The notes below the pieces were generated by a model, which had not been told where the DNA came from, ran no database searches, and saw nothing but the letters and a program-made list of their open reading frames with translations. 64,000 nucleotides of DNA from NCBI RefSeq assembly GCF_000143415.4, contig NW_003314277.1:2074764-2138763 (forward strand), given 5' to 3'. Made by a program: the position numbers and the translations under genes. Source of the stretch: Selaginella moellendorffii (Eukaryota > Plantae > Lycopodiophyta). Shown here piece by piece: positions 8,464 to 58,150 of the stretch; within the stretch, counting starts at the first letter, position 1; every line of letters begins with the position of its first letter.

Positions 8464-11080
8464 ATGGGGGAGGAGGGAATGGAGGAGAGCGCGCCCGCCG
8501 CGGATGATCCGAATGATCCGGAAATCGGCAATGCAATGCTCGGAATCGGCAATGCAGCGCTCGGCGATCGCTTCTTGTACAGGCCTCGTCGAGATTCTGA
8601 GGTGAAATCTCCCGAAATCTTGCCCCTTCTCCATATTTCTCCGTTTCTTCGCGTGTCTCCATCTTTCTCTGGATAGGAGGCTCCATTGGATCCGAAATCA
8701 AATGGCATCGCGGAAATCTTGAAGATCGTGTCCTGGGATCCATGGCCTTTCTACAGGGAACGCTCCGAGGTACAAAAGCCTTTTCTCGTGTTCTTCTTAG
8801 CAATCCACTTTCTTGCTCGAAAGAATCGCACTTTGGATGTGCCGAAACCTTGGGACGCTGCTCTCATCGACAGCCTGAAAGTCGATCGCTTCTACTACAG
8901 ACTCCATCAGGTAAGATGATGGTGTGTAGTATTCTGTGACTCATTTTATGCTGGAAAGGAACGCGCTGTTTCGGAAACTGGCTTTGCTCCGGAGTGGACA
9001 ATCTACAAATTCTTACACCGTCATCTAGCATCCCAAGTAAGCTGAATCTTTTGGAAGAACAGAGAGCATTATGAGTAGGAGTCGGGATCTAGGAGCGATA
9101 GAGTACTAGTTGCTATGTCCTCTTGACGGTCGTTTCTTGATCGTGGTTTTGAAGGGCTCGAGGAACTTGCTGGCACCGCAAATGGGATGGAGTTTAACTG
9201 AGCGCTACCGAGAGCCGCCATGCAGTGAGTAGATACCCAAAAGCTTTTCTTCTCGACTGATTTATCTTTGTTCTTTCTCATATTTAGTCTTAGACACTTG
9301 GGAGTTGAGAAGTGATTTTCCCGGCCAGATCAATCAAAAATATCCGGACTTGCTGCGACAGCATGCAAACATCTACCTCGCCCGCACTTCCTTGAGTGGT
9401 ATAAACACTTTTTCTCTCACAATTTGGAACTACAGTTCTAAAAGAAGTTGCTCGCCCTGCAGGTATTTTCAGCGATTATACACGTGCCGGCCAGACCAAT
9501 CTAGAATACCGGGAGATGCTACGACAGAATGCAAACGTCTTTTTGCCTCTCACTTCTTTGAATGGTATGTCTTTTTGATGCTTATTCCCTGGTAACGTGA
9601 CTTTGTACCCAGGTCTTTTCCTTGATTACAAATTGGGTGCAGCAAGAATTTCTTGTCATGGCTTGTTTCATGATTATCTCGTGTTTTCTTGCGAGCTTCC
9701 GTTCGAGTTTGCTTCAGCGCCTGAAACACAGCACGTGCTAATGAAGAATTTACCGGACATCGATACTGGCGTGATAAGCTTACTATCAACGGGCTCACTT
9801 GTAGTTGAGGTTCTTCTACAGCAGCTACAGTTTTTCGGAGTGTTACCTGGTGACAACACGAGTTTTGTAAGTGATCACACAGCTCCTTGTGCACTCTGTC
9901 TGGCACCAAAGAGTCTTCACATCTTACAAGGCAAAACTATCGTCGTCCTCACAGCAGGTAGGCTGCTATGTGAATAATTGTGATTTCCTAAAAGGCTGCA
10001 GATGTTTTGCAGAAAACTCACCAAGAGTGGTGACAAAACTACTTTTGCCACTCCCAGATCGTGTCAATCGTATGCTGATAAGCCTTAGTCATGAAGAAAT
10101 GCCAGAGAGGATGCTGATAGAAACTTGGAAACAGCAGCAATGGAGCACGATGTCTCAGTTGGAGAGTACATATCTACCATACCGTCCTGGCTCCCTGGTG
10201 AAACCATTGGATCTCTTGCACTTGATGTGCTCCCATATGACTCGTCCAAGTAAGTACAGAGTTCTTGAAAACTAATGTGTTCACAATTTTGTTCTTTAGG
10301 GGTGCTAAAGCTCTCAACCCAGGCTGTTACCAATTTCATAAGGCTCTATACTCAAGCAAACCGCTTTGCGGTTAGGAAGGAATATCTCACAAAACGAAAA
10401 GAGATAATGTTTAGCGGTTGGGGTGACGTTCCTAATATTTTGATTGTCGCGACCTTTGAACCAGCTTGTGCTCTTATAAACAGGTAACTCATCATTGACA
10501 CAGCATTTTAATGAGGTTTTTTCCTTTTAACAGAGCCATACGACATATCTCTGATGCCTATGGTCGCAAAGTTGAAACTCTAATGCTGGCAGAAGCACCA
10601 ACCGAGTCTATCCCAAGACTCTTCTGCAATAACTTTTCGAGAATTATCGAACAGGCTGAATTGGTTCTGTCAGCTTTTAGAGCTCTGGAACAGCAGGTAT
10701 GCACTCTTTTTGAAACGAATCGTGAATAATAGTTATATTTTGTTACAGCATACAGCGCCTCTTGAGCCGGCAGAACAGCGAGACAACGCACTCCAAATGT
10801 ACTGCTGTATGTGCAACAAGTTTGGTGCTCCAGGAGAATTGGTGACGGTGCTGCCTTGTAATCATCACGGACACACATCCTGTTTCATGTCTTGGATGCG
10901 TCAGGAGTCGATGCATGCATTAGATGCTGACTTCAATGGGGAGTCACCACCTCAGTGGCCGAAGCTCAGCTGTCCCTTGTGTCGATATCCTGTGCAATCC
11001 CAGCTCGCCTCAGGTATCTTGAGATTGAACTTACTTTTCACTTCTCAAATGGCTTGTTTCACCCTTCAGCATCAAGTTAG
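8464..11080 (+). CDS. Multi-exon orphan protein with C-terminal RING-H2 finger (putative E3 ligase)
   Basis: A chain of exons bounded by GT-AG sites starts at ATG 8464. The exon near 10750-11013 encodes CCMCNK...LPCNHHGHTSCFMSW...CPLCR. The N-terminal region is unrecognised and internal exon boundaries are approximate. Confidence 0.65.
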
Positions 11081-11271
11081 GGGGACTTGAGGACATCAAC
11101 ATAAATACTGCAACATCGTAAATCAGGTGAAGAGTTCTGTGTTTGTTTTCCTTTCTTACGTTTGTTTCCTTTTGACAGAGTCTTGGGGCTGTACATAATT
11201 TTTTCGTCGTTAGGCCTTTTGGACGGTTGAGAGTTTATAAATCCGACGGCTGCGGGCCTAGGTTTTGGGGC

Positions 11272-12280
11272 ATGGAGAGGCTGCTTGCGAGAATAAGGAG
11301 GCTTCCAAAGGACGTGAATCATGTCGTCGAGCAGTGGAGCTTGCTCTTACAAGACGAGGACTTTCGCTGTTCATCCGGTAAGGCCCATCCTTTTCTTGGA
11401 ATCAAATACTATGCTCGTTTGTCACGCAGGAACTGGGGGATTGGTCCTGGTGACTGGACTTCCCGAGGACTATGCGGGCTGCTTTGACGGCTTGACACCC
11501 GACCAGATCGAGATAGCGACCACAATGTCCACGGGCCTCAACGTTGGCTACGGGATCATCAAGTGCGACGACGACACACAGGCTCGCAAAACCATTACTC
11601 AGCTTGATGGGTCGACGGTGGAGGGCAAGCAGATCCGTGCCGGATGGCTGTGCCAGGCAAATCCCCCGGAGCCTGGAGAAAAGAAAGAAGAAGAACTTGA
11701 AGAAGATGGCGATGGTGGCTTCTCGTTCAGCGTCAAGAGGGAACGCGGCCACTATCTGCTCGAGTATGAAGTGCGCTCCGACGGGAGGTTTCGTGCCGCG
11801 GCTCGCTACACCTCGAGGCCGTGCAAAGGTGACGAGAAGACAGTGTTTTACGAGACGTATGTCACTAGGGAGACTGTCCGTGAGTTCCAACGCATCATCC
11901 TCCAGGGCCAGGTACTTCGCTCGAGATCCTCTCCTTGTTTCATTCTTTCTAGATTCTCTTTTTCTCAACTTGGTTTCCAGGAGGACATGGATTTCAGCGA
12001 GGACAACGAAGCGTGGCCGGCTCCAGGATACGTGGCGGGCCGAAACCAGCTCAAGTTCTCGATGGGTGGGAAGAGCACTTGCCTGGCCTGCGAGGGTGGA
12101 CATGGCGGGACGGCATTCATGAGGCAGAGGGGGATGCACCGGCTGGCGTACTTCCATTACTTGCTCTACGATCTTGGGAACTTCGCCAAGTTGATTGTCG
12201 AGTTTCACGCTGGACGGCCGCTCATTGGAGAGCCCGCGGCGTGCCGCTGTGAGATCGATGGCTGGCTGGGTTTGCTCTAG
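11272..12280 (+). CDS. Fusion of a Y14/RBM8A-like RRM and a divergent Mago nashi domain (295 aa)
   Basis: Exons 11272-11377, 11430-11911 and 11981-12280 (888 nt, GT-AG introns, phases consistent). RRM: GGLVLVTGLPED...TGLNVGYGIIKC...ARKTITQLDGSTVEGKQIRAGW. Mago: GHYLLEYEVRSDGRFR...ETYVTRETVREFQRII..EDNEAWPAP...GRNQLKF...LAYFHYLLYDLGNFAKLIVEFH. Confidence 0.8.
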
Positions 12281-12413
12281 ATATTCACGTCAAAGATCCA
12301 AACTCTTTGTCAAAGGCTAGAGACTTGTTTGTCGCGACGGGTTATGAAATGATAGTATAGTTTACGAAAATTTAATGAGAAAAGAGAATAGAGCAAAAGG
12401 AAGAACCAGATCG

Positions 12414-15400
12414 TCAAAGCATTTGGTGGAGCGCTTGAAGCTTCTCCATCTCGATCGATCTCGCGGCACTATCGCCCTTCCAATTCTCCACCACCATCTC
12501 GTAAACTCGCCGCTGCTGCCGAGGATTGTCAATCGCCTGGCGAACATCGACTTGGCCGCAGAGCTTGAGCCTCTTGGACGCCGGCGTCAAGCTCTCCACC
12601 ACGTCGCCCAAGCTCGGCTCCCTCGACACGTACTCCATCCTCACCTCCACAAGCTTCTTCATCGCCCTCTTCACGCCATCGCCAAGCTTCACGGCCTCGT
12701 TCACGAGCCCCTCCTCCCTCTCCAGCATCCTCCTCAAAAGATTCGCCCTCTTACTCACGCACTCCACCATCGCTTCCAGCAGCTCCTCGTCCTCCAGCCA
12801 TAGCAAGAACTCGAAGAACTTCTTCTGCTTCTCCCAAGTCTTGTACACCTTCTCCTCCTGGCTCAAATACGATCGATCCTTCTGTATGCCGCTGGAGGTG
12901 GCACCGTGGTATTCAATCCAGGAACTCGTCTCCGCTAGATCAGCCGCGGTCACCACCTCGTCCTTGCAAAGCTTGACTACCACCGTTTTGGCCGCCTCGT
13001 TGTTCTTCAAGTCAACCAAGCCCGCAGCCTTTCGAATCGTCTTGATCGCAACACAATCGTTGTACTTCGCCAGCAAGACCTCGGGCTTTAGCAGCAGCGC
13101 AACCACAATCCAGTGCTCTTGTAGACTGGTCCTTCCCGGACCCGTGATCCGTGCAGCATAGTCGCAAGGAAAAGGCCTGGCAGCAAAACGCAGCGCTTCA
13201 TCGTGGCGTCCCAGCGATTCTAGCTCCAGCATAAACTCCACCATGTTGCCCACGTACGCCTCACACAGCTGTTCCGAGCTCTTGCCTTTCTTCAAACCGG
13301 ACCCGGCATAGCCATAACCACGGTTTGCCTTTTCCACTTTCGCTTTCGCTTCCTCTTCCTCCACCTTTCTATCCTCCGCCACCTTCTTCCTTTCGTCCCA
13401 GGTTCTCTCCACTTCGCCGGTGCGGCTCGGGAAAAAATGCATCACTTTGGCCAGCGTTCCGCCGCACAGCCTCTGAAGAGTTATCTTGCCGAGGATCTGC
13501 GAGGCCTCCTCCTGGAGCCCAGCTTCGAGGCAAAACTCGATCAAGAGCATGATCCCATCTCTTTTCCATTTCATACCACCCTGGACCTCGATCCCGGTCA
13601 AGTTCGCCATGAGCTTGGCACACAGCAGCTTTGCAGCTACAATGGCTCCGTCCTGATACCCGACCCCATCCCGCAGCCGCGAAGGAAAACCTCCCAGCTT
13701 CATCGCAGCTTCACCGGCAACGCGCTCTATGACTCCGGTAACGATCTCCTTGCAAGCCTCCCAGCCGTAAGCTTGCACGGCAATGGTGAATTCCTTGGTG
13801 TCTATCAGCTCCACACCCCAGCTCCTCATGATCGACAGCGCCTCGTCGCTAAGCCCAGACTTGACGCAAACTTCGAGCAGCTTTCCCGGAGCTTGGAGGA
13901 CCTCTTGTCTCTCCTCAGAGTTGTAAATTGAATAGCTCGCTTGGAGAAGCGAAGCAAGCGAATCAAACCGGTGTGTCAAAGACGTGACCATCTCCTGCAA
14001 GTGTCCCCTTGACGGTGATCCAGGAGCTGCAAAGTCACTGCCATAAGTTTCTCTCATCCAGTCCAGCACCCACGCTACGTCCTCCAACGACGAGCAGATC
14101 GTTCTCATGAAGCTGTCCTTGGGCCAAACCACGAGCACTGCTACGTGATAGAAGAACTGATCAGTTCCACCTTCGTTGCCAGCCATCATCCCGGTTCCTT
14201 GGAACTCGTCCTCGAGGAAATCAAACAAGTCAATCTCGCGAATCGCGTCAGCGTCTTCGTCGTCATAATCATCATCGATAGCTGTCTTTGTCCGAGAGGC
14301 CCTGAGAACTTCTTGCTTGATGTCTATGTTCCACTTCTTAAACTTTGCTGGCTGGTTGTCCACCGTGATCCAATTGTGAATCACGTACTCGACCTCGGGC
14401 TCGTCCGCCACGGTCTTGTGCTTGGTGAGCATGCAGAGATGAAGCTCTAGAAACTCGCAAGCTCTCACGAGAGCGGCCACCACGCGGTCGTGACCCTTGA
14501 GCCCCGCGAAAGACAGGCTCGTCTTTGAGTACTTGTGAGCCAAAGGAACCGCCAGTAGCTTACGACCCTTCCTGTCACTCTTGCTGACGTCTTGAACACG
14601 AACACCATCATCATCGCTATGGTCTTCGTCATCATCATCCTCTTCGTCATCAACGTCTCTCATATCATCGTCTTCGTTATCATCACCTTCTGCTGCTTGA
14701 TCATCACCAGTGCCAGCAGCCCATTGCTGGAAGAGAGCTCTCACTCGGGGAAGAGCCGAGACGAACGACGGGACGTTCTCCGCGGGTATAAACTCCACGT
14801 TGTTTCTCACCAGGCTAAAAACCAGGCACAACCTTGACCCGCTCGTCACCTCCTTGAGCTGGTGCTCGCAGTCGCAGAAGAAGATCGTCGAGAAGTAGCG
14901 GCTGGAGCTCCCGTCCGAGAAATCAAACTCGCAGCACTGCCGTCCCTGGCGGACCGCGAGAGCCCCGCCGCTGTGTCCCGTGCTCGTCGGAAGTTGCAAG
15001 ATCATGGTCGCAAACATGCCATCTTCCTTCTCCGTGTCCCTGTGGAACTTGAAGTGGCCGCCAGCCTCGTAGAGCAGCAGCTTGTAGAGCTTGACGTCGA
15101 GCTCCAGAGCAGTGGAATCCAGCCCCATGGCGGCGAGTCCATGCGCGGCCAAGTCGCGAGCCACCGACGAGAAGAAGTTTATAACCTCGGGGCAAGAGAC
15201 CCTGTCGGGATTGATCTGCCAAGCTCGCCTCACATCCGTGTCGACGAGAGTTCTCTCCCCAAGGCCGTATGGAGCTTGCTGGGACACGGACTTTATGTTG
15301 GCGAGACCTAGCGGCGAAAGTGGAAGACTGATCCTCTCGGCACCCTCCACATGCAGCGATGCTGGCATCCGAAACTTTGCTACGTCAATCTCACCTCCGG

Positions 15401-15455
15401 TGGCGAAGATCTCCCGGTCGCACCACAGCGCCTTGTTGAGCTTCTCCATAGCCAT
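12414..15455 (-). CDS. Large 2OG-Fe(II) oxygenase (prolyl-4-hydroxylase-like domain) with long C-terminal region, copy 1
   Basis: Intronless 1013-aa ORF with QAPYG..TLVDTDVRRAWQI, LYKLLLYEAGGHFKFHRDTEK..GMFAT (HxD), GGAL, CEHQLKEVTSGSRLCLVF (distal H and R), an acidic tract and GNEG..FFYHVAVLVVWP. Confidence 0.88.
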   Translation of the reverse strand: MAMEKLNKALWCDREIFATGGEIDVAKFRMPASLHVEGAERISLPLSPLGLANIKSVSQQAPYGLGERTLVDTDVRRAWQINPDRVSCPEVINFFSSVARDLAAHGLAAMGLDSTALELDVKLYKLLLYEAGGHFKFHRDTEKEDGMFATMILQLPTSTGHSGGALAVRQGRQCCEFDFSDGSSSRYFSTIFFCDCEHQLKEVTSGSRLCLVFSLVRNNVEFIPAENVPSFVSALPRVRALFQQWAAGTGDDQAAEGDDNEDDDMRDVDDEEDDDDEDHSDDDGVRVQDVSKSDRKGRKLLAVPLAHKYSKTSLSFAGLKGHDRVVAALVRACEFLELHLCMLTKHKTVADEPEVEYVIHNWITVDNQPAKFKKWNIDIKQEVLRASRTKTAIDDDYDDEDADAIREIDLFDFLEDEFQGTGMMAGNEGGTDQFFYHVAVLVVWPKDSFMRTICSSLEDVAWVLDWMRETYGSDFAAPGSPSRGHLQEMVTSLTHRFDSLASLLQASYSIYNSEERQEVLQAPGKLLEVCVKSGLSDEALSIMRSWGVELIDTKEFTIAVQAYGWEACKEIVTGVIERVAGEAAMKLGGFPSRLRDGVGYQDGAIVAAKLLCAKLMANLTGIEVQGGMKWKRDGIMLLIEFCLEAGLQEEASQILGKITLQRLCGGTLAKVMHFFPSRTGEVERTWDERKKVAEDRKVEEEEAKAKVEKANRGYGYAGSGLKKGKSSEQLCEAYVGNMVEFMLELESLGRHDEALRFAARPFPCDYAARITGPGRTSLQEHWIVVALLLKPEVLLAKYNDCVAIKTIRKAAGLVDLKNNEAAKTVVVKLCKDEVVTAADLAETSSWIEYHGATSSGIQKDRSYLSQEEKVYKTWEKQKKFFEFLLWLEDEELLEAMVECVSKRANLLRRMLEREEGLVNEAVKLGDGVKRAMKKLVEVRMEYVSREPSLGDVVESLTPASKRLKLCGQVDVRQAIDNPRQQRRVYEMVVENWKGDSAARSIEMEKLQALHQML

Positions 15456-16494
15456 GCCAAAAACCCTAGCAAAGAGGTTGAAAACATTTCATATGATATA
15501 ATCATTGCCTTGTTGAGCTGCTCCATAGCCATTCTGTTTCCTTGCAAATATGGGCTTATGGCTGAGCAAATCTGGCATATTATGGGATAGGATACTTTCT
15601 CTTCAACGTGGCGATCTGCAATTCTTCCAACAAGCGTGCGCCGCCTCAATCTCCAGGCTTCAACCGTAGAGACAATCTCCATCGGTCTGCATGCATGCCT
15701 AACAACCCGTAGATTGAAGGAAGCAGGAAGAAAAGACAGATCTCATCAATCACATCGTTTTCGATTGCTGCTGCAGGGTTAGCTTCCTTTGTTATATACA
15801 ACAGTCCATGAGAGATCTGATTGACCTAAAGCAGCCCGACGAGTCAGCGACATAAAATGGGAGAAGCAGTCCGTTTGTGAAGGAGTCAACGATTTTCCGG
15901 TCAAGGCTTGATGGATAGCCTTAAACTTTTCTAATAAAACATAATTACAATTAAAATAAATAAAAATTAAAAAATTATATTAATAATTTAATATATTCTC
16001 AGAATATTCAGATATATTATAAGATACTATTAAATTTTATTGGTTGAGATTTAATAACTTTCATATATATGAATAAAATATTTGTTCTAACCAAGCAATT
16101 TTTCCTCATTATTAAACAATTATTCCCCTCTTAAAAATAAAAAGTCATGATATTACAATTAATTTCAATTTGATTTATAAGTAGAAATGATCGTAGTAAA
16201 CTACTTTAGAATATTAAAATTTGTTATATTAATGACCACAGTTATATAGATAAACTCCTTTTTCTCGGTTTGTTGAGAGTGTATAAAGTAGTATATTAAA
16301 AATATAATTAATGTAACAAAATAAAAAAAAGTTAGGCTTTTATAGATAAATATTTAATTTTTATAATATTTAATGAATATATTTTATGTCACATCACATC
16401 TCCAATCAATAAAAAGACATGCATAGCTTTTCAATTACATAACAATGTCCTATATACCTGTCTATTTGTATATAGCATCATAGCCATACACTTG

Positions 16495-16497
<3 letters not shown>

Positions 16498-16555
<58 letters not shown>
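16498..16555. repeat. Compound (TA)n(GT)n microsatellite
   Basis: Directly visible TA run followed by a GT run. Confidence 0.97.
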
Positions 16556-16558
<3 letters not shown>

Positions 16559-16914
16559 GCCAATACTAATATTAGCGTAGTGGGATTTTGGTAGCCATCG
16601 GATTGGTTTCAATCCGGACCACTCGCTCCTGTATATAAGCTAGGGTTTTTGGGCTAATTGATATGCACATTTTCTGTATTCCCTTTTTATATTCCAAGCA
16701 CTATATATATATATATAAAAATTATTTACAAGTCTACTATATATTCACTACAGGATTAATTGTAAACCATGCACACATCTACATATGAGTTGCAAGCCTG
16801 CATTCACATCTTGCCACCCACAATGTGATGCATGATGGGGCAGGAATAGCACCAATGGCATACATCAAAAAGAATATTTTAGTTTATCTAGAATCAGAGT
16901 CTGCAAGATTTAGG

Positions 16915-17763
16915 TGGGAACCTGCCACTCAGATGGGGTTTAATTGAAAGCGGACACTTCTTGTTATCTTTGTTCCTTCTCACAATTCTGAGCTGTGAAT
17001 TTCCTGGCCAGATCAATCTAGATACCTAGACTCGGTTGCACATTTTCTTAAGTCCTTTGGCTCGCTTTATAAATTGGCGGGCTAGAATTGCAAACATCTA
17101 TTAATGGTATGCCCTTTATCTCACTTGGTTGATTGGGTGTGGCAAGAATTTTTTATTATGGCTTGTTTACTATCTTATATGTTCTTGAGAGCTTCCATTT
17201 GAATTTGCCCTAGCACCCAAAATCCAGCATATGGTAGTGGAGAGGATAATGGAGGTTTTAGCACAATAAGCTTTCTCTCAACACACTCGTAAGTTGTAAT
17301 TAAGTAAGGTTCTCTTACAATAGATACAATTTTTCAAGACTTTACTCAATGACAACACTAAAAGCTTCATATAAGTGATAACATAGTTCCTTATGCACTC
17401 GGTATGGCACCATCTTACATGGCAAAACCATCATTGCACTCACAGCAGGTAAGCTACTTTGTGAATAATTGTGATTTTCTAAATTGCTGTAAATGTATTG
17501 TAGAGAATTCACTGAGACTTGTGACAAAACTGCCTTTACCACTCAAGCGTATATGCTGATAATTCAGAAGCACCACCATCTGAGGCAATTCCAAGCATGT
17601 GCAAAGATGTCATGATAATTATCGAGCGCCAAATTTGTTCTGTCAACGGTCAAGCTCTAAAACAGCAGGTGTGCATTCTTTTGAAATGAATCGTGAATTA
17701 TGCTCATACAACTCCTCTTGAGCCGGCAGAAGAGCAAGACAGTGCACTATAAATGTACTGCTG
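16915..17763 (+). pseudogene. Decayed copy of the RING-H2 orphan gene
   Basis: Colinear similarity to about 9170-10808 (ggccagatcaatc; attgggtg..gcaagaattt; cacagcaggta..gtgaataattgtgattt; cctcttgagccggcagaa; aaatgtactgctg). It has deletions and stops and ends just at the RING start. Confidence 0.8.
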
Positions 17764-17855
17764 GCTACTGCTGGTTCGACGGGTTTTGAAATGATAGTAT
17801 ATTCTACGAAAATTTAATGAGAAAAGAGAATAGAGCAAAAGGAAGAACCAGATCG

Positions 17856-20800
17856 TCAAAACATTTGTTGGAGCGCTCGAAGCTTCTCCATCTCGATCGA
17901 TCTCGCGGCACTATCGCCCTTCCAATTCTCCACCACCATCTCGTAAACTCGCCGCTGCTGCCGAGGATTGTCAATCGCCTGGCGAACATCGACTTCGCCG
18001 CAGAGCTTGAGCCTCTTGGACGCCGGCGTCAAGCTCTCCACCACGTCGCCCAAGCTCGGCTCCCTCGACACATACTCCATCCTCACCTCCACAAGCTTCT
18101 TCATCGCCCTCTTCACGCCATCGCCAAGCTTCACGGCCTCGTTCACGAGCCCCTCCTCCCTCTCCAGCATCCTCCTCAACAGATTCGCCCTCTTGCTCAC
18201 GCACTCCACCATCGCTCCCAGCAGCTCCTCGTCCTCCAGCCATAGCAGGAGCTCGAAAAACTTCTTCTGCTTCTTCCAAGTCTTGTACACCTTCTCCTCA
18301 CTGTCAACGTCTTCATATCGATCCTTCTGGGAAGTGGCACCATGGTATTCATTCCAGGAACTCATCTCCGCTATATCAGCCGTGGCCACCACCTCATCCT
18401 TGCAAAGCTTGACCAGCACCTTCTTGGCCGCCTCGTTGTTCTTCAAGCCAACCAAGCCCGCAGCCTTTTGAATCATGTTGATCGCAGCACAACGATGGTA
18501 CTCGCCCAGAATGACCTCGGGCTTTAGCAGCAGTGCAACCACAATCCAGTGCTCTTGTAGACTGGTTCTTCCCGGATCCGTTAACTTCTGTGTAGCACAG
18601 TCGCAAGGAAAAGGCCTGGCAGCGAAACGCAGCGCTTCATCGTGGCGTCCCAGGGATTCTAGCTCCAGCATAAACTCCACCATGTCGCCCACGTACGCCT
18701 CACATAGCCCTTTCGATCCGGAATAGACATAATCATAGTAAGAGAAACGGTTTTCCTTCTCCGCTTTCGCTCTCGCTTCCGCCATCTTCTTCCTTTCGTC
18801 CCAGGCTCCCTCCACTTCGCTGGTGCGGCTCGGGAAATAATGCATCACTTTGGCCAGCGTTCCGCCGCCCAGCCTCGGGAGAGTTAGCTTGGCGAGGATC
18901 TGCGAGGCCTCCTCCTGGAGCCCAGCTTCGAGGCAAAAATCAACCAAGAGCATGATCCCATCATCTTCTCTTTTCCGCTTGTAACTGTCCTGGAACTCGG
19001 CCGGGAGCTCGGTGGAGATCGCGATGAGCTTGGCATACAGCAGCTTTGCAGCTCCAATGGCCCCGTCCTGATACCCGACCTGGTCCCGCAGCCGCGAAGG
19101 AAAGCCTCCCAGCTTCATCACAGCGGCATGCCATGCAGGAGCTTCACCACCTTTTTCTTGCCTTAGAAAGGATACTTGTTTCCTAGGTGGAGTCTTCTCC
19201 ACGCGCTCGATGACTCCAGCAATGATCTCCTTGCAAGCCTCCCAGCCGTAAGCTTGCACGGCAATGGCGAATTCCTTGGTGACTATCAGCTCCACACCCC
19301 AGCTCCTCATGATCGACAGCGCCTCGTCGCTAAGCCCAGACTTGACGCAAACTTCGAGCAGCTTTGCCGGATCTTGGAAGAGCTCTTGTTTCTCCTCAAA
19401 GCTGTAATAGTCCCTTTCGAGAAGCGAAGCCAGCGAATCAAACCGGTGTGTCAAAGACGTGACCATCTCCTGCAAGTGTCCCCTCGACGGTGATCCAGGA
19501 GCTGCAAAGTCACCGCCATAAGTTTCTCTCATCCAGTCCAGCACCCACGCTACGTCCTCCAACGACGAGCAGATCGTTCTGATGAAGCTGTCCTTGGGCC
19601 AAACCACGAGCACTGCTACGTGATAGAAGAACTGATCAGTTCCACCTTCGTTGCCAGCCATCATCCCGGTTCCTTGGAACTCGTCCTCGAGGAAATCAAA
19701 CAAGTCAATCTCGCGAATCGCGTCAGCGTCTTCGTCGTCATAATCATCATCGATAGCTGTCTTTGTCCGAGAGGCCCTGAGAACTTCTTGCTTGATGTCT
19801 ATGTTCCACTTCTTAAACTTTGCTGGCTGGTTGTCCACCGTGATCCAATTGTGAATCACGTACTCGACCTCGGGCTCGTCCGCCACGGTCTTGTGCTTGG
19901 TGAGCATGCAGAGATGAAGCTCTAGAAACTCGCAAGCTCTCACGAGAGCGGCCACCACACGGTCGTGACCCTTGAGCCCCGCGAAAGACAAGCTCGTCTT
20001 TGAGTACTTGTGAGCCAAAGGAACCGCCAGTAGCTTACGACCCTTCCTGTCACTCTTGCTGACGTCTTGAACACGGACACCATCATCATCGCTATGGTCT
20101 TCGTCATCATCGTCTTTCATATCATCGTCTTCGTTATCATCATCTATATCATCACCTTCTGCTTCGTTATCATCACCTTCTGCTTGATCTGCTTGATCAT
20201 CACCAGTGCCAGCAGCCCATTGCTGGAAGAGAGCTCTCACTCGGGGAAGAGCCGAGACGAACGACGGGACGTTCTCCGCGGGTATAAACTCCACGTTGTT
20301 TCTCACCAGGCTAAAAACCAGGCACAACCTCGACCCGCTCGTCACCTCCTTGAGCTGGTGCTCGCAGTCGCAAAAGAAGATCGTCGAGAAGTAGCGGCTG
20401 GAGCTCCCGTCCGAGAAATCAAACTCGCAGCACTGCCGTCCCTGTCGGACCGCGAGAGCCCCGCCGCTGTGTCCCGTGCTCGTCGGAAGTTGCAAGATCA
20501 TGGTCGCAAACATGCCATCTTCCTTCTCCGTGTCCCTGTGGAACTTGAAGTGGCCGCCAGCCTCGTAGAGCAGCAGCTTGTAGAGCTTGACGTCGAGCTC
20601 CAGAGCAGTGGAATCCAGCCCCATGGCGGCGAGTCCATGCGCGGCCAAGTCGCGAGCCACCGACGAGAAGAAGTTTATAACCTCGGGGCAAGAGACCCTG
20701 TCGGGATTGATCTGCCAAGCTCGCCTCACATCCGTGTCGACGAGAGTTCTCTCCCCAAGGCCGTATGGAGCTTGCTGGGACACGGACTTTATCTTGGTGA

Positions 20801-20963
20801 GACCTAGCGGCGAAAGTGGAAGACTGATCCTCTCGGCACCCTCCACATGCAGCGATGCTGGCATCCGAAACTTTGCTACGTCAATCTCACCTCCGGTGGC
20901 GAAGATCTCCCGGTCGCACCACAGCGCCTTGTTGAGCTGCTCCATAGCCATCCTCTTTCCCAT
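17856..20963 (-). CDS. Large 2OG-Fe(II) oxygenase, copy 2
   Basis: Intronless 1035-aa ORF, near-identical to copy 1 in the catalytic N-terminus and the extreme C-terminus. The 3' flank is also duplicated (12335 vs about 17777). Confidence 0.88.
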   Translation of the reverse strand: MGKRMAMEQLNKALWCDREIFATGGEIDVAKFRMPASLHVEGAERISLPLSPLGLTKIKSVSQQAPYGLGERTLVDTDVRRAWQINPDRVSCPEVINFFSSVARDLAAHGLAAMGLDSTALELDVKLYKLLLYEAGGHFKFHRDTEKEDGMFATMILQLPTSTGHSGGALAVRQGRQCCEFDFSDGSSSRYFSTIFFCDCEHQLKEVTSGSRLCLVFSLVRNNVEFIPAENVPSFVSALPRVRALFQQWAAGTGDDQADQAEGDDNEAEGDDIDDDNEDDDMKDDDDEDHSDDDGVRVQDVSKSDRKGRKLLAVPLAHKYSKTSLSFAGLKGHDRVVAALVRACEFLELHLCMLTKHKTVADEPEVEYVIHNWITVDNQPAKFKKWNIDIKQEVLRASRTKTAIDDDYDDEDADAIREIDLFDFLEDEFQGTGMMAGNEGGTDQFFYHVAVLVVWPKDSFIRTICSSLEDVAWVLDWMRETYGGDFAAPGSPSRGHLQEMVTSLTHRFDSLASLLERDYYSFEEKQELFQDPAKLLEVCVKSGLSDEALSIMRSWGVELIVTKEFAIAVQAYGWEACKEIIAGVIERVEKTPPRKQVSFLRQEKGGEAPAWHAAVMKLGGFPSRLRDQVGYQDGAIGAAKLLYAKLIAISTELPAEFQDSYKRKREDDGIMLLVDFCLEAGLQEEASQILAKLTLPRLGGGTLAKVMHYFPSRTSEVEGAWDERKKMAEARAKAEKENRFSYYDYVYSGSKGLCEAYVGDMVEFMLELESLGRHDEALRFAARPFPCDCATQKLTDPGRTSLQEHWIVVALLLKPEVILGEYHRCAAINMIQKAAGLVGLKNNEAAKKVLVKLCKDEVVATADIAEMSSWNEYHGATSQKDRYEDVDSEEKVYKTWKKQKKFFELLLWLEDEELLGAMVECVSKRANLLRRMLEREEGLVNEAVKLGDGVKRAMKKLVEVRMEYVSREPSLGDVVESLTPASKRLKLCGEVDVRQAIDNPRQQRRVYEMVVENWKGDSAARSIEMEKLRALQQMF

Positions 20964-21072
20964 GCCAAAAACCCTAGCAAAGAGGTTGCGAAAATTACGT
21001 GTGAAAAAACTTCATATGATTATATCATTGAAGTTTTATTAGTCAATGAGTGAAATCCAGGATTTTTCTAGT

Positions 21073-21355
21073 GGATCATCAAATGCGACAATGACATACA
21101 GGCCCGCAAAACCATTTCCCAGCTCCGACGGTGGAGGACAAGCATATCCGTGCGGGATGGCTGTGCCAGCCTCAAAAGAAAGAAGAAGAACTTGAAGAAG
21201 ATGGCGATGGTGGCTTCTCGTTCCCGAGTATGGAGTTAGCTCCCAAAGGTGACGAGAAGACAGTGTTTTACGAGATGTATGTCACTAGGGAGACTGTCCT
21301 TTAGTTTCCATCATTCTCCAGGGCCAGGTACTTAATAGATCGAGATCCTCTCCTT
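21073..21355 (+). pseudogene. Deleted fragment of the Y14-Mago fusion gene
   Basis: Matches about 11553-11936 (ggatcatcaa.tgcgac; aagaagaacttgaagaagatggcgatggtggcttctcgttc; caaaggtgacgagaagacagtgttttacgag; ctccagggccaggtactt), including the intron 2 donor. Several internal deletions. Confidence 0.88.
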
Positions 21356-53870: not shown

Positions 53871-56486
53871 GAAACGTTTCTAGCGATCGATCGATCCATC
53901 CATCAAACGTTGCTAAAGCGCGGCGCTACCTCGATCGATCAGAATACACTAACTCCCTACTGCTTCACAATGCCGAAGAGAATGCTGCTGCAAGACGATT
54001 ACTCTGCCCATCCAAAACCCTAGAATCTTCTCGTTTAGCCCTTTGCCCCCCATTTCACGGTTGTGATTTTCTTCTAAACCAAAGGATATCAATTTTGATG
54101 CTCATGTACTTAAAACTCACATTAGTATTAGAAAGACAGGTTTTTATGGAACCATGATACAATTATTGCTGCCCATGCTGATTCAACCATTGGTTACGAG
54201 GTAAGGCTTGTAAAGTAGCTTCGTTTTTAGAAAAAAAAATCAAAAACCTGTAAGCCCCCTTTATAATATGAAAAGCACACATTACTATGTTATGGGAAAC
54301 AAAGACCAGAATCAACATTTTCTATGGACAGTAATTCCTCCCGGAATCTGCTAGTTGCTCCCGGAATCCAGCAATCAAGGCCTCGCATAGAAATTACAAT
54401 ATAATAGTTGAATATGGGAGCTTGCAAGCATAATCCCAAACTCTAGCTAGTTGGCAAAACTCTCTCTAGATTTCTCAGCAGAGCTGTGTGATAGAGTAGA
54501 CATTCCTCCAACTTGGCAAGGTTTCTTGGAGTCTGACTTATGTGCACGCTTAGAGCAAGAGCAAGAACATCACTTGCATTGTCATTGCCTTAACACTCCA
54601 TCCTGCATCTAACACTGCATGGAAACTTGGAGAACTTCATAAGCATATGCCAAGCCCCTTCACCCTTTTTGAATGTTCCTGTTGAGTTATTTTGACCATG
54701 GTGTACAGGTATGACTTCCTCACTTTCTCACAATGTGCCAGGAAGAAAAATGATTCATTTAATCTAAACTGAGGAAGATTATGGCAGCATTATATAATTA
54801 TAGTAGTATAGCATATGAATTGTGTATCTAAACCTCAATTAATATATTTATTCCCATATCTTGAATATTTATATTGGGAAGGTGAGGGGCATTGCAATTA
54901 AAAGACAAGCTTTTTGGTATGTTTTACTCTAGTGTTCAAGATTGTGCTTTTAATTTTTAATTCTATATGTTATAAGTTTTTGCCTAATATAGAATTCTAG
55001 CTATTACTGTGTTTAGATTTACTCTTCCTTTTTTATCTTTATTACATTCTCTTTTCTGCCATGCTATGCTATCATCAATTGAGGAGTGTGTCATTTAAGA
55101 TTATAAATTATGCATCATATTATCACTTAGCAATGTTGTTTTTGTTGTTGTATCCTCTTCAAACCAAGCTTCTAATGTTATAAGGTGTGATTATGTTGGT
55201 GTTGCTCCAATCTTTAGTATTTTGTTATCTCTAGCTTCTTTGGGACATAATTAAGTGTCTCTTATTCTTGGCATTTTGCTACCTACTGTTATAGGAAAAG
55301 TTGTTGCCTACACGATATCCTTCTTTGGGGTATTTATCACACTAGATGCATCCTCAAGAATTCTCAATATGTAAGTATTTAGATTGGCTCTATATTTTGA
55401 TAGCAAATCTAACTAGGTGTTTCCTTCACACTCAGATGTGCTTGAGTATTTTCTACAATAGCTAGTTGACACCAAGTGCTTAGTTTCTCTTAGCAAGCTT
55501 CTATAGAGAATTTTTGGTTTCTCATAATGACTTAAGCATTTGCCAAGCATCAAACTAGCCCTTCAACTCTTATATAAGGTCTCCCATACTTAATGTGGTA
55601 TAAAAAATCAACGAAAATGACTTGATAAATAAATATAAATGGAAAAGGCCCATGAATAAAAATACATCCTATTTTTCAATTAGTTAAAAGTTTTGGGGTT
55701 AAATGTTTTGGGTTTGAGTAGTATTGGGCTGAGTGACAAATTCAAGAGTTTACATCTTGAGTCATAAACTTGAAATCTTACTCATATCCCAAATTATTTA
55801 TAGCAAATATTGCAATTGGAGGATATGATGTTTAAAAAGGCCTTCTTGACTCTGATTGTATAACAAATGTGATTTCTTTTCCATTGGTGGAGGTTTTATA
55901 AATTTTTCCTTCAAACACAACCATGCTATTAAAACCTTTATAAACTATATAGTGGTGTCTATGGGATTTTGTTGAGATATTTTGATCCAAAATGATGTCA
56001 TTTCAGTGCATGTGGACTTCATTGCAGTTGACTTCTAAGCACTATGATATGCTCCAATTGTTGACTCTATCATCCTTTGCCGACCATGGTTTGTAGCAAC
56101 AAATTGTCAAATTGATTGAAGATGTGGTATGATGACAAATAGTAATGAGACAAATGAGGCCAATCTTTTCAACTCTTTTAGACCCACATAGCAATAGAAG
56201 CATATGTCTATAATTGCAACTGGTCCACAAGCCAAGGCCAATCAAATGCTAAAAAAGTTCTCTCTTGAGATTATTCAAGACTTCACTCTTCTAGTTGTCC
56301 ATTTCCTTCAATGCAAATAGGACTTTTCTCAAGTGTTCAGATCTATATTTATATTTATATTTTATTGGTTGAATTTACTTGGAAATAAAGATTAAATCAA
56401 ATTTGAAAGATAAAAAAATGTCATTTTAAGATAAAACAATGTTTTTCTTGTGTTTGAAAAGTCGTGAGCTCAGCTCGTGAAGACAA

Positions 56487-56540
56487 GAGCCCAGGTAGGT
56501 TTGAAAAATGAGCTCGTGAGCTCAAAACCTGCCTGGGCTC
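56487..56540. repeat. Short inverted repeat / hairpin with GAGCTC subrepeats (possible DNA transposon terminus or mini-MITE)
   Basis: gagcccaggtaggtttga ... tcaaaacctgcctgggctc, with nearby repeated agctcgtga units. Confidence 0.55.
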
Positions 56541-57153
56541 CTATCATTAAAAAAGATCCTAAGATCAACCATCACATCCACTAGACAAATTTTACAATTG
56601 TGAAGCTTGAGAAGAGTTTTTAGATTGCTTTTATGGTTTAGTTCCTGCATAAAAATGTAATAGATATGCTTGCAGGAAATATACTTTTTCTTTGTCCTGC
56701 CCCTTTATGTAAAATCTGAAAAGCTATAGGATGGATTTTTGCAGATTTTGATAGTGTAAACTCGTACTTTTTGACGATTTAGTCACAATAACAAACTCCT
56801 TAGCCACAATATTAATGTAATTTATCTTTGTGATTGTGCACCTCAACTTTTTTCCTAGTTTGATCTTTTCTTGTGTACCTTTCGAAATGGAAGACCTATA
56901 TTGTATAGCCTTTCCATTTTTAGTTGATCATATATGCTAGTCTAGTGTTGACATTGGTGGTATAATAGTATTAACAACAACATTTAAGGAAGTCTTCAGC
57001 TTAAAATTTGCTTTCTCTAGACTTTCAATCTCTTTTTTCAAAAGATTGCAACTTCACTTAATTAACCACTCCTCTAGCTTTAAAATAATTGAGTTGTGGA
57101 TCTAGTTTGTATGAGTAACATCAATCCCACAACATCAAATCTAGCTTAACTGA

Positions 57154-58150
57154 TGTCGGGGGAAGGAGGGGCATCTCCCCCAACATTTGCTCAAATACAA
57201 GAAATGCTTCAATACTCTCCACAAAATGCCCCCTTTTGCCCTTGTGGGGCAAGGGTTTTATACAAGGAAGATGGGGAATATTCCAAAGACTAGACTATTC
57301 CTTCTCTTTCTCTCACTCTCTTGGTGGCCACACCCTAACATGCGACCACGGTGGATCGCACTGGCTCCAAACACGCGAGAACCCGCTGAAGAGTGTAGAG
57401 TGTACCTCTGCTACTGATGCGAAGTGCTGGTAGCTGCGTGAAATAGTAGAAACTTTAGAAAACAAAGTGGAAAAAAAAAAAAAGAGGTAGGTGTGAAGTT
57501 TAGAGACAGGGAGGAAAACCCGGTGGGAAACCCTATAGTCAAATTGGACCCTGAAGTTGAAGAAAAAGTGCAGAAAAAGTGTGGAAAGGGGAGAAAAATA
57601 AAGGAAAAAAGAGTGAGTACCCAAAGAACTTAACTCGTACTTGGATTTTGACATAGGAAAGTGTAATATGCAAATGTAGCCTCATGATGACTTTAGGTAT
57701 GCTCTAAGGATTGGCCAAGATCGAGAAAGAAAGAGAGGTAGAAGAGGGGATGTGTTGCCCAAGGGTGGTAAGTGTAGAGATGATGAAAGATGGAGTGATA
57801 TGATGGAGTGTCGAGATGGTGGTGGCACTCTAAAAAAGTGGCCTCTCACTAAAGTGTTAAGCCAATGGTTTGATAACCGGTAACTAGTAACTTGTAACCA
57901 GTAACTGGGTACCTGTAACTAGTAACCACCTGCTCTCGCTCCTACTCCTATGCCTGCTCCAGCACCAATATGGTGGAGTGATATGGTGGAGCACCGAGAT
58001 GGTGGTGGCACTCTGAGAAGGTGGCCATCTCTGAAATAAGAGTAATTGAAGAAGGCAGTAGCTGAAAAGGACGGCGTGGTCGCTAGGTTGCCGGTAAAAG
58101 GAGGTGGCATGTGTCCACTGAGTGCTGGAGTAGAAGAAAGTGGCTTTGGC
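57154..58150. mobile_element. Older LTR-like / retroelement remnant that hosts the Gypsy insertion
   Basis: A TG...CA-bounded segment at 57154-57340 has a minus-strand TATA. Purine-rich sequence follows, with internal direct repeats (gagatggtggtggcactct x2; gtaac-rich repeats). No TSD found. Confidence 0.35.

What the first reader, a model, noticed from the sequence alone, without database searches (positions are those of the whole stretch)
11272..12280. Single-chain Y14-Mago fusion: both halves of the exon junction complex heterodimer in one divergent protein
Seen: a clean three-exon gene (295 aa) with an RRM, an acidic linker (NPPEPGEKKEEELEEDGDGG) and a second domain. Known: Mago reads GHEFLEFEF..DGKLR...KE.....V..E.KRI...EDD..WP.PD.VG.QELEI...LR.FYYLVQDLK..VFSLI.LH. 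The second domain follows this colinearly (GHYLLEYEVRSDGRFR, ETYVTRETVREFQRII, EDNEAWPAP..GRNQL, LAYFHYLLYDLGNFAKLIVEFH). The RRM (LVLVTGLPED..TGLNVGYGII..QLDGSTVEGKQIRAGW) resembles Y14/RBM8A (ILFVTGVHEE..TGYLKGYTLV..GLNGQDLMGQPISVDW), Mago's obligate partner. The two are normally separate, extremely conserved genes. Inference: this is a lineage-specific tethered heterodimer with strong divergence, including loss of the invariant Mago GHKGKFG and NSNYKND motifs. It could be a neofunctionalised EJC variant, a dominant-negative or a decoy. I know of no description of such a fusion, but cannot check.
Basis: partly seen in the sequence, partly recalled or inferred. Interest (0 to 1): 0.93.

Follow-up and report, generated by a model that had tools for sequence, protein, structure and literature searches.

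The report
Natural RRM–Mago fusion protein in Selaginella
A spikemoss (Selaginella moellendorffii) gene encodes, in one spliced and expressed protein, a degenerate RNA-recognition motif joined to a very diverged copy of Mago nashi, a normally ultra-conserved exon-junction-complex protein; descent of the RRM from Mago's partner Y14 is likely but unproven, and the function is unknown.

Summary
The three-exon model (11272-11377, 11430-11911, 11981-12280) translates exactly to NCBI XP_024531606.1, "uncharacterized protein LOC9642110" of Selaginella moellendorffii (295 aa). Assembled transcript contigs from four studies carry the predicted GT..AG junctions, and single contigs span both domains.

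The C-terminal half is a true but extremely diverged Mago domain:
- Pfam scores 34-36 bits against a cutoff of 27, and PDB Mago chains match at E about 1e-7.
- A model matches Mago chains at TM 0.76-0.83.
- It keeps the phase-0 intron of plant MAGO genes.
- Identity to canonical Mago is about 27%.

The N-terminal half is a real but degenerate RRM (hhalign about 90%, model pLDDT 86, truncated helix 1).

The Y14 label is only partly supported. A verified Y14 profile scores it no better than bacterial or generic RRM profiles (15-19 bits), and the best pairwise match is TIA-1 RRM2. In its favour, it has Y14-type residues on strands 1 and 3 (VTG, aliphatic RNP positions, Trp after strand 4). It also has a phase-1 intron one codon from a widely conserved Y14 intron.

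No relative or other RRM-Mago fusion was found in the databases searched. Allele comparison gives omega about 0.3 (P=0.02). Docking in cis and function remain untested. The scan also flagged the other haplotype's copy (s1-405225).

The parts
11127..11178 (+). Probable 5'-UTR intron (52 nt, GT..AG), seen in one run only.
   Evidence: The X1 contig joins 11123/11176 with the cut shifted by 3. The GT and AG ends were checked. The leader has in-frame stops and no ATG before 11272, so it does not extend the ORF.
11272..11377 (+). Exon 1: start codon and residues 1-35 plus the first base of codon 36. The N-terminal peptide has no recognised domain.
   Evidence: It has no Pfam match.
11378..11429 (+). 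Intron 1, 52 nt, GT..AG, phase 1. It lies seven codons before the VTG of RRM strand 1.
   Evidence: It is spliced out in contigs of X1, X5 and X15. Fourteen Y14 loci have a phase-1 intron eight codons before VTG.
11438..11653 (+). Degenerate RRM, residues 39-110. The order is strand 1, short helix 1, strand 2, strand 3, helix 2, strand 4. About 6 residues are missing around helix 1, and only one of three RNP aromatics is kept (Y76).
   Evidence: Pfam RRM_1 gives 16-19 bits, below its cutoff of 20.7. PDB phmmer matches TIA-1 at 1e-7. hhalign gives 89-90%. The AlphaFold2 model has pLDDT 85.9, and Foldseek finds RRMs.
11654..11719 (+). Linker, residues 111-132, Pro- and Glu-rich and acidic.
   Evidence: Sequence. 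pLDDT is below 35 in the full-length model.
11720..11911 (+). N-terminal half of the Mago domain (residues 133-196: four strands and helix 1), in the same exon as the RRM.
   Evidence: Pfam Mago_nashi matches over residues 140-272. See also the PDB alignment and the model's secondary structure.
11912..11980 (+). Intron 2, 69 nt, GT..AG, phase 0, four residues after the 'RII' of Mago helix 1. This is the position of intron 1 in canonical plant MAGO genes.
   Evidence: It is spliced out in all four runs. Physcomitrium and Hevea MAGO have a phase-0 intron at the same place.
11981..12211 (+). C-terminal half of the Mago domain (residues 197-273: the EDxxxWPxP loop, two strands and a long C-terminal helix).
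12212..12280 (+). C-terminal tail of 22 residues, absent from canonical Mago, plus the stop codon.
   Evidence: Alignment A1. Its pLDDT is low.
21073..21355 (+). Decayed partial paralogue of the same gene. It covers part of the RRM, the linker and part of the Mago N-half, and has a frameshift, a deletion of the first Mago strands and a stop.
   Evidence: blastn gives 79% and 88% identity to 11553-11728 and 11824-11936, confirmed by tblastn and frame translations.

Best explanation
LOC9642110 is a real, spliced, expressed gene. So far it is found only in Selaginella moellendorffii.

Its structure suggests an in-frame genomic fusion. The 5' part (a short exon, a phase-1 intron, then an exon that encodes a whole RRM) looks like a Y14/RBM8A gene copy. 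That RRM exon runs straight into what was exon 1 of a duplicated MAGO gene, and MAGO's first intron is still in place. Both halves then diverged strongly.

The product has four parts: a 35-residue N-terminal peptide, a degenerate RRM, a roughly 22-residue acidic linker, and a complete Mago fold with a short tail.

Inferred mechanism, not shown: the RRM has lost most RNA-contacting RNP features and has a hydrophobic sheet surface. It probably packs in cis on the helical face of the Mago domain, as Y14 does on Mago in trans, giving a self-contained single-chain version of the heterodimer. About two thirds of the residues that are nearly invariant in canonical Mago are replaced. It therefore probably no longer makes the canonical contacts of the exon junction complex core and serves a derived, lineage-specific role.

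Shown here: the gene model, its transcription and splicing, the two domain identities, the MAGO intron, the allelic copy, and weak purifying selection.

Inferred: Y14 ancestry of the RRM (about 60%), docking in cis, and loss of exon-junction-complex core function.
For: Gene and RNA:
- The model equals XP_024531606.1.
- Spliced contigs from four studies span exons 1-3.

Mago half:
- Pfam gives 33.8-35.8 bits against a cutoff of 27.
- PDB Mago chains match at 1.5e-7 to 5e-7 over residues 138-269.
- Foldseek finds Mago chains at E 4e-9 and target-normalised TM 0.76-0.83. The best ESM Atlas shape match is the Mago cluster.
- The phase-0 intron four residues after 'RII' is shared with Physcomitrium and Hevea MAGO.

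RRM half:
- TIA-1 RRM2 matches at 1e-7.
- hhalign gives 89-90% over 80 columns.
- The AlphaFold2 model has pLDDT 85.9, pTM 0.73 and RRM topology. Foldseek finds RRMs, with Y14 chains at ranks 2-4.

Leaning towards Y14:
- T44, G45, non-aromatic L42, aliphatic I78 and W108 match the Y14 state and not the canonical state.
- Fourteen distinct Y14 loci have a phase-1 intron in the Ser codon just before the RRM. That is the same phase as intron 1 here and one codon away.
- Published basis for the mechanism: Y14 binds Mago through its sheet surface, the interface is mainly hydrophobic, and RNP residues bind the protein (PMC2685099 and PMC5113200).

Selection:
- The allelic locus is 97.5% identical over 10 kb but shows only 7 CDS changes, 3 non-synonymous and 4 synonymous.
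- A third haplotype in RNA shows 4 non-synonymous and 3 synonymous changes and no stops.
- Pooled omega is about 0.29, P=0.022.
- A decayed fragment nearby shows what a dead copy looks like.
Against: - A Y14 profile, verified at 150-157 bits on RBM8A chains, gives this RRM only 15.4-17.1 bits. That is no more than a bacterial RRM profile (17.3-18.1) or Pfam RRM_1 (16-19). hhalign scores are 36.1 against 35.8.
- The best pairwise match is TIA-1 RRM2, at 25-27 bits per domain and 32% identity, including a W..PP.P tail. The best Y14 sequence gives 24 bits, and typical ones 16-18.
- The Y14 signature motifs SxEGW, HEEAxEDD and LNLDRRTG are absent.
- The intron match is off by one codon, and I could not measure how often other RRM gene families have an intron there.
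- Docking in cis was not tested.
- The RRM model used an alignment that is half Y14 rows, which biases the Foldseek ranking.
- The selection estimate rests on 14 substitutions.
- No orthologue exists to show long-term conservation.
Confidence: 0.5

Rival explanations
1. This is the same real fusion gene, but the RRM comes from a non-Y14 family, for example a TIA-1 / UBP1 / RBP45-47-type RRM2 captured by exon shuffling. On this view the protein is an RRM-plus-Mago chimera, not a tethered copy of the heterodimer. The RRM may be free, and the Mago domain may still pair with the canonical Y14 or with nothing.
For: - TIA-1/TIAR RRM2 are the top PDB sequence hits, ahead of about 24 other RRM chains before the first Y14 chain. 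The similarity runs past strand 4 into W..PP.P.
- The Y14 profile scores no better than the bacterial or generic RRM profiles.
- The Foldseek top hit is TIA-1 RRM2.
Against: - The margin is small: 25-27 bits against up to 24 for a Y14 sequence.
- The TIA-1 match covers only strands 2-4. Only the Y14 profile aligns strand 1 as well.
- The Y14-type states VTG, L42, I78 and W108 differ from TIA-1-type GDL and Phe.
- There is a phase-1 intron next to the conserved Y14 intron position.
Confidence: 0.3
2. This is an expressed but functionally unconstrained young chimeric gene, on its way to being lost. On this view the divergence reflects relaxed selection, not a new role.
For: - It has no relative in 5.8 and 1.84 billion-sequence searches.
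- 53 of 82 near-invariant Mago columns are lost and a whole loop is unrecognisable.
- The RRM is degenerate, at about 17 bits where ordinary RRMs cross-score 40-48.
- A decayed duplicate lies 9 kb away in a region of tandem duplication.
Against: - The ORF is intact in three haplotypes.
- Pooled omega is about 0.29, P=0.022, and the CDS is less diverged (0.8%) than the 10-kb region (2.5%).
- After about 70% replacement, the fold-defining pattern is still recognised end to end by Pfam and folds as Mago. That is not expected of neutral decay without stops or frameshifts.
- Splicing is clean in four studies.
Confidence: 0.17
3. This is an annotation or assembly artefact, with two separate genes (an RRM gene and a Mago-like gene) wrongly merged.
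For: An older JGI model (EFJ27755, 905 aa) did merge this gene with two upstream genes. One RNA contig also carries the 3' end of the upstream RING gene.
Against: - The RRM, the linker and the Mago N-half lie in one uninterrupted exon.
- Single RNA contigs cover exons 1-3.
- The same structure is present on the other haplotype scaffold.
- The upstream leader has in-frame stops, so the RING gene is not fused to it.
Confidence: 0.02

Closest known systems
Mago nashi / MAGOH with Y14 / RBM8A, the obligate heterodimer of the exon junction complex core (PDB 1HL6, 1OO0, 1P27, 2J0S)
   Same: The C-terminal domain is a Mago_nashi family member by profile, by fold and by a shared intron. It is paired with an RRM whose strand 1 and strand 3 residues resemble Y14. 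The RRM-then-Mago order and a flexible linker would allow the trans complex to form in cis.
   Different: The two parts are covalently joined in one polypeptide. Identity to canonical Mago is about 27%, whereas canonical Magos of plants and animals are 77-94% identical to the plant query. The motifs GHKGKFG, NSNYKND and SKIGSL..D..S.DP.G are lost. The RRM lacks the Y14 signature motifs and most of helix 1. Extra N- and C-terminal peptides are present. Binding to eIF4AIII, PYM, importin 13 or Barentsz is untested.
RRM2 of TIA-1 / TIAR / Pub1 (plant relatives: UBP1, RBP45/47, from general knowledge)
   Same: It is the best pairwise sequence match for strands 2-4 (32% identity over 57 residues), including GYG in RNP1, QIR..W in strand 4 and a following PP.P.
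   Different: There is no match over strand 1 and helix 1. RNP2 reads VTG where TIA-1 RRM2 has VGDL (recalled from general knowledge, not shown by a tool here). RNP1 position 5 is Ile, not Phe. There is a single RRM, and no glutamine-rich or prion-like tail.
Protein-binding or occluded RRMs (Y14, UPF3, UHM domains, Prp24 occluded RRM)
   Same: The RNP motifs are degenerate and the sheet surface is hydrophobic, which suggests protein binding rather than RNA binding. There is a weak Pfam RRM_occluded hit (E 0.03-0.1, not significant).
   Different: The presumed partner domain is in the same chain. No flanking helices or UHM signature (Arg-X-Phe) were identified.
Rosetta-stone fusions of interacting partners
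   Same: Two proteins that are separate and bound to each other in other eukaryotes appear as one chain in one lineage.
   Different: Here the fusion is an extra, highly diverged copy, not the organism's working version of the pair (presumed: the canonical genes were not checked here).

Membership tests
Mago_nashi (Pfam PF02792) | Profile score above Pfam's gathering threshold over most of the domain. | tested here: met
   The score is 33.8 bits for the whole protein and 35.8 bits for residues 125-295, against a cutoff of 27. Profile positions 12-136 of 142 are matched. Canonical Magos score 168-256 bits.
Mago_nashi (Pfam PF02792) | Mago fold: an antiparallel sheet with long helices packed on one face. 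| tested here: met
   AlphaFold2 gives strands 134-179, helix 182-198, strands 217-234 and helix 249-273, with pLDDT 55-78. Foldseek finds nine Mago chains at E 4e-9 to 5e-7 and target-normalised TM 0.69-0.83, with the next hit at E 0.016. The Atlas Mago cluster matches at TM 0.77. Caveat: the alignment used for the model consisted of Mago sequences.
Mago_nashi (Pfam PF02792) | Near-invariant canonical residues and motifs. | tested here: not met
   29 of 82 columns that are at least 90% conserved among 117 canonical Magos are kept. None of 9 is kept in loop 235-248, and 3 of 13 in strands 5-6.
Mago_nashi (Pfam PF02792) | Gene structure shared with plant MAGO genes. | tested here: met
   The phase-0 intron four residues after 'RII' of helix 1 is present in this gene, in Physcomitrium MAGO and in Hevea MAGO. 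The second canonical intron (YYLVQ|DLK) is absent here.
Exon junction complex core subunit | Binds eIF4AIII, locks it on RNA, and interacts with PYM, importin 13 and UPF3. | not testable with these tools
   No interaction data exist. The residue-level interface papers were not available.
Y14 / RBM8A RRM | RRM fold. | tested here: met
   hhalign gives 89-90%, E about 2e-6, over 80 columns. The AlphaFold2 model has pLDDT 85.9. Foldseek finds RRM chains from E 1e-5.
Y14 / RBM8A RRM | Scores better on a Y14-specific profile than on generic or unrelated RRM profiles. | tested here: not met
   The Y14 HMM gives 15.4-17.1 bits, a bacterial RRM HMM 17.3-18.1 and Pfam RRM_1 16.3-19.3. True Y14 chains score 149-158 bits on the Y14 profile.
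Y14 / RBM8A RRM | Signature motifs S[IV]EGW, HEEAxE[DE]D, LNLDRRTG and VDWAF. | tested here: not met
   Only VTG of strand 1 and the Trp after strand 4 are kept. The helix 1 motif is deleted and LNLDRRTG reads IATTMSTG.
Y14 / RBM8A RRM | Y14-type states at sheet-surface positions that differ from canonical RRMs. | tested here: met
   Y14 counts are out of 35 rows and bacterial counts out of 36 rows.
- T44: Thr in 27 Y14 rows; Gly in all 36 bacterial rows.
- G45: Gly in 24 Y14 rows; Asn in 30 bacterial rows.
- L42: non-aromatic in 19 Y14 rows; aromatic (Tyr or Phe) in all 36 bacterial rows.
- I78: Leu or Ile in 32 Y14 rows; Phe in all 36 bacterial rows.
- W108: Trp in 25 Y14 rows; Glu in 30 bacterial rows.
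The only control set is bacterial RRMs.
Y14 / RBM8A RRM | Conserved phase-1 intron in the Ser codon immediately before the RRM. | tested here: inconclusive
   Fourteen distinct Y14 loci show ...cAG|CN [AG]TN GAR GGN TGG, a phase-1 intron eight codons before VTG. This gene has a phase-1 intron seven codons before VTG. The phase is the same and the position is one codon off. No null from other RRM families is available.
Y14 / RBM8A RRM | The sheet surface binds the helical face of Mago. | not testable with these tools
   The full-length model has pLDDT below 30 in the RRM half. Combined alignments were misaligned. No model coordinates are exposed.
TIA-1 / Pub1-type RRM2 | Closest sequence relative among RRMs. 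| tested here: inconclusive
   It is the top PDB hit, at 24.8-26.9 bits per domain, but the best Y14 sequence reaches 24.3 bits. No plant UBP1/RBP45 sequences could be obtained.

The most novel reading that the evidence does not exclude
Selaginella carries a natural single-chain Y14-Mago. On this reading a duplicated copy of the obligate heterodimer became covalently tethered and was released from the constraints that freeze canonical Mago. It then took on a new role as an autonomous module, for instance one that competes for or rewires partners of the exon junction complex. It would be the first natural example of this heterodimer collapsing into one polypeptide.
Probability: 0.3. Interest if true: 0.8.

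Novelty: new variant of a known kind. Interest (0 to 1): 0.6.

Why it matters
Mago nashi is among the most conserved eukaryotic proteins. In one search the listed canonical Magos, from plants, animals and protists, were mostly 77-94% identical to a plant query. That stasis is usually ascribed to simultaneous binding of Y14, eIF4AIII, PYM, importin 13 and others.

This copy keeps the fold but only about 27% identity, and it is welded to an RRM. It is a natural experiment on what happens when those constraints are lifted. It may also show how an obligate heterodimer can turn into a single chain.

If the RRM docks in cis, the protein gives a ready-made minimal Mago-RRM unit for structural and evolutionary study. 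If it still binds any exon-junction-complex partner, it would be a lineage-specific regulator of mRNA surveillance in a lycophyte.

If it binds none and has no phenotype, it is a documented case of a transient chimeric gene. Public records name it only "uncharacterized protein" or "RRM domain-containing protein". No paper in the searchable library describes it.

Tried and rejected
- **Unspliced ORF.** The 319-aa ORF from ATG 11321 is rejected because all RNA contigs are spliced.
- **Fusion with the upstream RING gene.** The old 905-aa JGI model joins them. It is rejected because the spliced leader has in-frame stops and no ATG before 11272.
- **Word-index search with the RRM region** and a **metagenome scan for relatives of the RRM** returned only the protein itself or nothing.
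- **PDB search with strand 1 and helix 1 alone** gave no hit.
- **ESM Atlas.** The search by features with the whole protein gave no usable hit. With the RRM part it gave only generic RRM clusters at 0.81-0.86, which is lead-level evidence.
- **Full-length AlphaFold2 with a Mago-only alignment.** The RRM half came out at pLDDT below 30, so there is no inter-domain information.
- **Full-length block alignments (Mago rows plus RRM rows).** MAFFT forced the two groups onto each other, so these were not submitted. The second structure job went to the RRM alone.
- **Model coordinates** are not exposed to scripts, so contacts could not be measured.
- **Residue-level interface literature.** Shi & Xu 2003 is not held, and searches for MAGOH K16/F17 led nowhere.
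- **Mago next to Y14 in other eukaryotes.** None was found on 120 Y14 loci, 663 kb in all.
- **Canonical MAGO and Y14 genes of Selaginella** could not be retrieved. Length limits of the word-index search excluded proteins of about 150 aa, and no eukaryote genome collection is searchable.
Full report
**1. What is in the sequence**

The window is Selaginella moellendorffii DNA. They give an 888-nt CDS. Its 295-aa product is identical to NCBI XP_024531606.1, "uncharacterized protein LOC9642110".

A second locus on another scaffold (L001, GL377566.1) is collinear with the window at 97.5% identity over 10 kb. It encodes XP_024538017.1, which differs at 3 residues. This is the other haplotype of the two-haplotype assembly, or a very recent duplicate. 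The scan had flagged it independently (s1-405225).

An older JGI model of 905 aa merges this gene with two upstream genes.

**2. Transcription**

Logan contigs from four runs in four different studies were laid on 10600-13000.
- All four skip 11912-11980.
- Three skip 11378-11429. The fourth begins at exon 2.
- No contig retains an intron.
- Single contigs run from upstream of the ATG to the 3' UTR.

Because the genome has the introns, these contigs come from RNA, and one transcript encodes both domains.

One run's contig extends upstream through a further 52-nt GT..AG intron (11127-11178) into the 3' end of the neighbouring RING-finger gene. In that contig the RING frame ends, and the leader has stops in the frame of ATG 11272. 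There is therefore no longer ORF.

**3. The Mago half**

- Pfam Mago_nashi scores 33.8 bits (35.8 for residues 125-295) against a gathering score of 27, over profile positions 12-136 of 142.
- phmmer against PDB sequences finds fly and human Mago at 1.5e-7 to 5e-7 over residues 138-269.
- An AlphaFold2 model built with a small Mago alignment has pLDDT 55-78 in this half and the expected strand and helix order.
- Foldseek returns nine Mago chains (E 4e-9 to 5e-7, target-normalised TM 0.69-0.83) and nothing else below E 0.01. The ESM Atlas shape search also puts the Mago cluster first.

Intron 2 is phase 0 and lies four residues after the 'RII' of helix 1. The first intron of canonical MAGO in Physcomitrium and Hevea is phase 0 at the same place. 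This argues for a DNA-level duplicate of a MAGO gene, not a retrocopy. The second canonical intron is missing.

Divergence is extreme. Identity to the consensus of 117 canonical Magos is 27%. Only 29 of 82 columns that are at least 90% conserved are kept. None is kept in loop 235-248. Helix 1 and the ED..WP.P..GR loop are the best preserved.

**4. The RRM half**

- Pfam RRM_1 is below threshold (16-19 bits against 20.7).
- phmmer finds TIA-1 RRM2 at 1e-7 (25-27 bits per domain, 32% identity over 57 residues) and many other RRMs.
- The ESM Atlas feature search gives generic RRM clusters.

To test the Y14 claim I fetched Y14 genes from metagenome contigs with a degenerate DNA pattern for LNLDRRTG[FY]xKGY. 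From these I built a 35-row alignment (A2) and confirmed its identity. It scores 149-158 bits on PDB RBM8A chains, while single-domain chains of other RRM proteins score about 53-58 bits. As a control I fetched bacterial RRM proteins.

Result:
- The Selaginella RRM scores 15.4-17.1 bits on the Y14 HMM and 17.3-18.1 bits on the bacterial HMM.
- hhalign gives 36.1 against 35.8, both at about 89% probability.
- Ordinary RRMs cross-score 40-48 bits on these profiles.

So this RRM is unusually degenerate and has no global Y14 signal.

With a 72-row RRM alignment, AlphaFold2 folds residues 30-125 at pLDDT 85.9 and pTM 0.73. The order is strand 1, a four-residue helix 1, strand 2, strand 3, helix 2, strand 4. 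Foldseek returns TIA-1 RRM2, Y14, RBM39 RRM2 and Pub1 within a factor of three in E-value. Half of the alignment rows were Y14, so this ranking is biased.

**5. Evidence that still leans towards Y14**

(a) Only the Y14 profile aligns the whole domain, including strand 1.

(b) At positions where Y14 departs from canonical RRMs, the protein has the Y14 state (35 Y14 rows, 36 bacterial rows):
- RNP2 reads V-T-G, not V-G-N.
- RNP2 position 2 is Leu. It is non-aromatic in 19 Y14 rows and aromatic in all 36 bacterial rows.
- RNP1 position 5 is Ile. Y14 has Leu in 31 rows, and bacteria have Phe in all 36.
- Trp follows strand 4.

These residues lie on the sheet surface. In Y14 that surface is the mainly hydrophobic Mago-binding face (PMC2685099 and PMC5113200).

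(c) Fourteen distinct Y14 loci from diverse uncultured eukaryotes have a 3' splice site of the form ...cAG|CN in the Ser codon of S-[IV]-E-G-W. That is a phase-1 intron eight codons before V-T-G, followed by an RRM in a single exon. Intron 1 of this gene is phase 1, seven codons before V-T-G, and is also followed by a single-exon RRM. One codon of indel would make them the same intron. I could not measure how often other RRM families have an intron there.

I put Y14 ancestry at about 60%.

**6. Origin model (inference)**

The gene reads as a Y14-type 5' exon, a phase-1 intron and an RRM exon. The RRM exon runs in frame, through a new acidic linker, into MAGO exon 1. Then come MAGO intron 1 and the rest of MAGO with intron 2 lost.

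A decayed fragment of the same fused gene lies at 21073-21355. It spans the RRM end, the linker and the Mago start, at 79-88% nucleotide identity, with a frameshift, a deletion and a stop. It sits in a tandemly duplicated region, so the fusion predates that duplication.

**7. Distribution**

- The word-index search of 5.8 billion proteins found only this protein's own cluster.
- An exhaustive phmmer search of 1.84 billion representatives with the Mago half found 12 others at E up to 0.001. The nine of them run through Pfam are canonical Magos (168-256 bits) with no RRM.
- 694 Mago-domain proteins of 175-556 aa were found. None of the 120 best listed carries PF00076. Their extra domains (NDK, Ras, cupredoxin-like, GDSL) look like merged gene models.
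- No Mago sequence lies on any of 120 Y14 loci.
- No paper in the library describes such a fusion.

Limits:
- A degenerate RRM like this one is invisible to precomputed Pfam.
- Only the top 120 rows were shown.
- Coverage of lycophyte transcriptomes is unknown.

**8. Selection**

| Comparison | Non-synonymous | Synonymous |
|---|---|---|
| Haplotype A against B | 3 | 4 |
| Third haplotype, seen in RNA (run X15) | 4 | 3 |
| Pooled | 7 | 7 |

There are no stops or indels in any haplotype. With 686 non-synonymous and 199 synonymous sites, pooled omega is about 0.29, and the one-sided binomial P is 0.022. The CDS differs by 0.8% between haplotypes, against 2.5% for the 10-kb region. This is modest evidence for constraint.

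**9. Mechanism**

Shown: a two-domain protein is encoded and transcribed.

Inferred:
- The RRM has one of three RNP aromatics, no basic RNP1 position 1 and a hydrophobic sheet. It is therefore more likely a protein-binding RRM than an RNA-binding one.
- Its obvious partner is the Mago domain, about 22 flexible residues away.
- Loss of most canonical invariant residues suggests it no longer fits the canonical exon junction complex core.

None of this could be tested.

**10. Verdict**

The finding is real and unusual. The 'Mago' claim is supported, the 'Y14' claim is probable but unproven, and the functional ideas remain open.

Noticed in passing
window 21073-21355 (+): A decayed partial copy of the RRM-Mago gene (79-88% nucleotide identity). 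It has a frameshift, a deletion of the first Mago strands and a stop, and it lacks exon 1 and exon 3.
   Followed up: partly
window 12335-15496 versus 17777-21004; also 9632-10807 versus 17132-17763: A tandem duplication (87-95% identity) of the neighbouring minus-strand gene, together with fragments of the upstream gene. The neighbouring gene is a 1013-aa ORF with a weak 2OG-Fe(II) oxygenase match (26.3 bits against a cutoff of 27). The RRM-Mago gene is missing from the second unit.
   Followed up: partly
window 10710-11090 (+) and 10996/11066: An upstream RING-H2 finger ORF (zf-RING_2, 27.6 bits). One RNA contig (run X1) links its 3' end to the RRM-Mago transcript, by read-through or overlapping UTRs. 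In that contig 69 nt of genome are replaced by CGCC with non-canonical ends. This could be an allele difference or an odd splice.
   Followed up: partly
window 8479-12277; protein P0014: The old JGI model EFJ27755 / UniRef D8RJP6 (905 aa, 'RRM domain-containing protein') merges three genes. Public annotation of this locus is therefore inconsistent between releases.
   Followed up: yes
loci L008, L020, L025, L026, L031, L034, L046, L049, L050, L054, L069, L070, L075, L117: Y14/RBM8A genes of diverse uncultured eukaryotes share a phase-1 intron in the Ser codon of S-[IV]-E-G-W, directly before the RRM. In each case the RRM then lies in one exon.
   Followed up: partly
window 11609-12362 (run X15): A third haplotype of the gene is seen in RNA labelled as another organism code. 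It has 7 CDS differences, none shared with the second assembled haplotype.
   Followed up: partly
window 16001-18000 and 54001-58000: AT-rich stretches (GC 0.34-0.38, against about 0.5 elsewhere).
   Followed up: no
locus L002 1852-2381: The first intron of Physcomitrium MAGO starts with GC (GCAAGT), not GT. It is a GC-AG intron.
   Followed up: no
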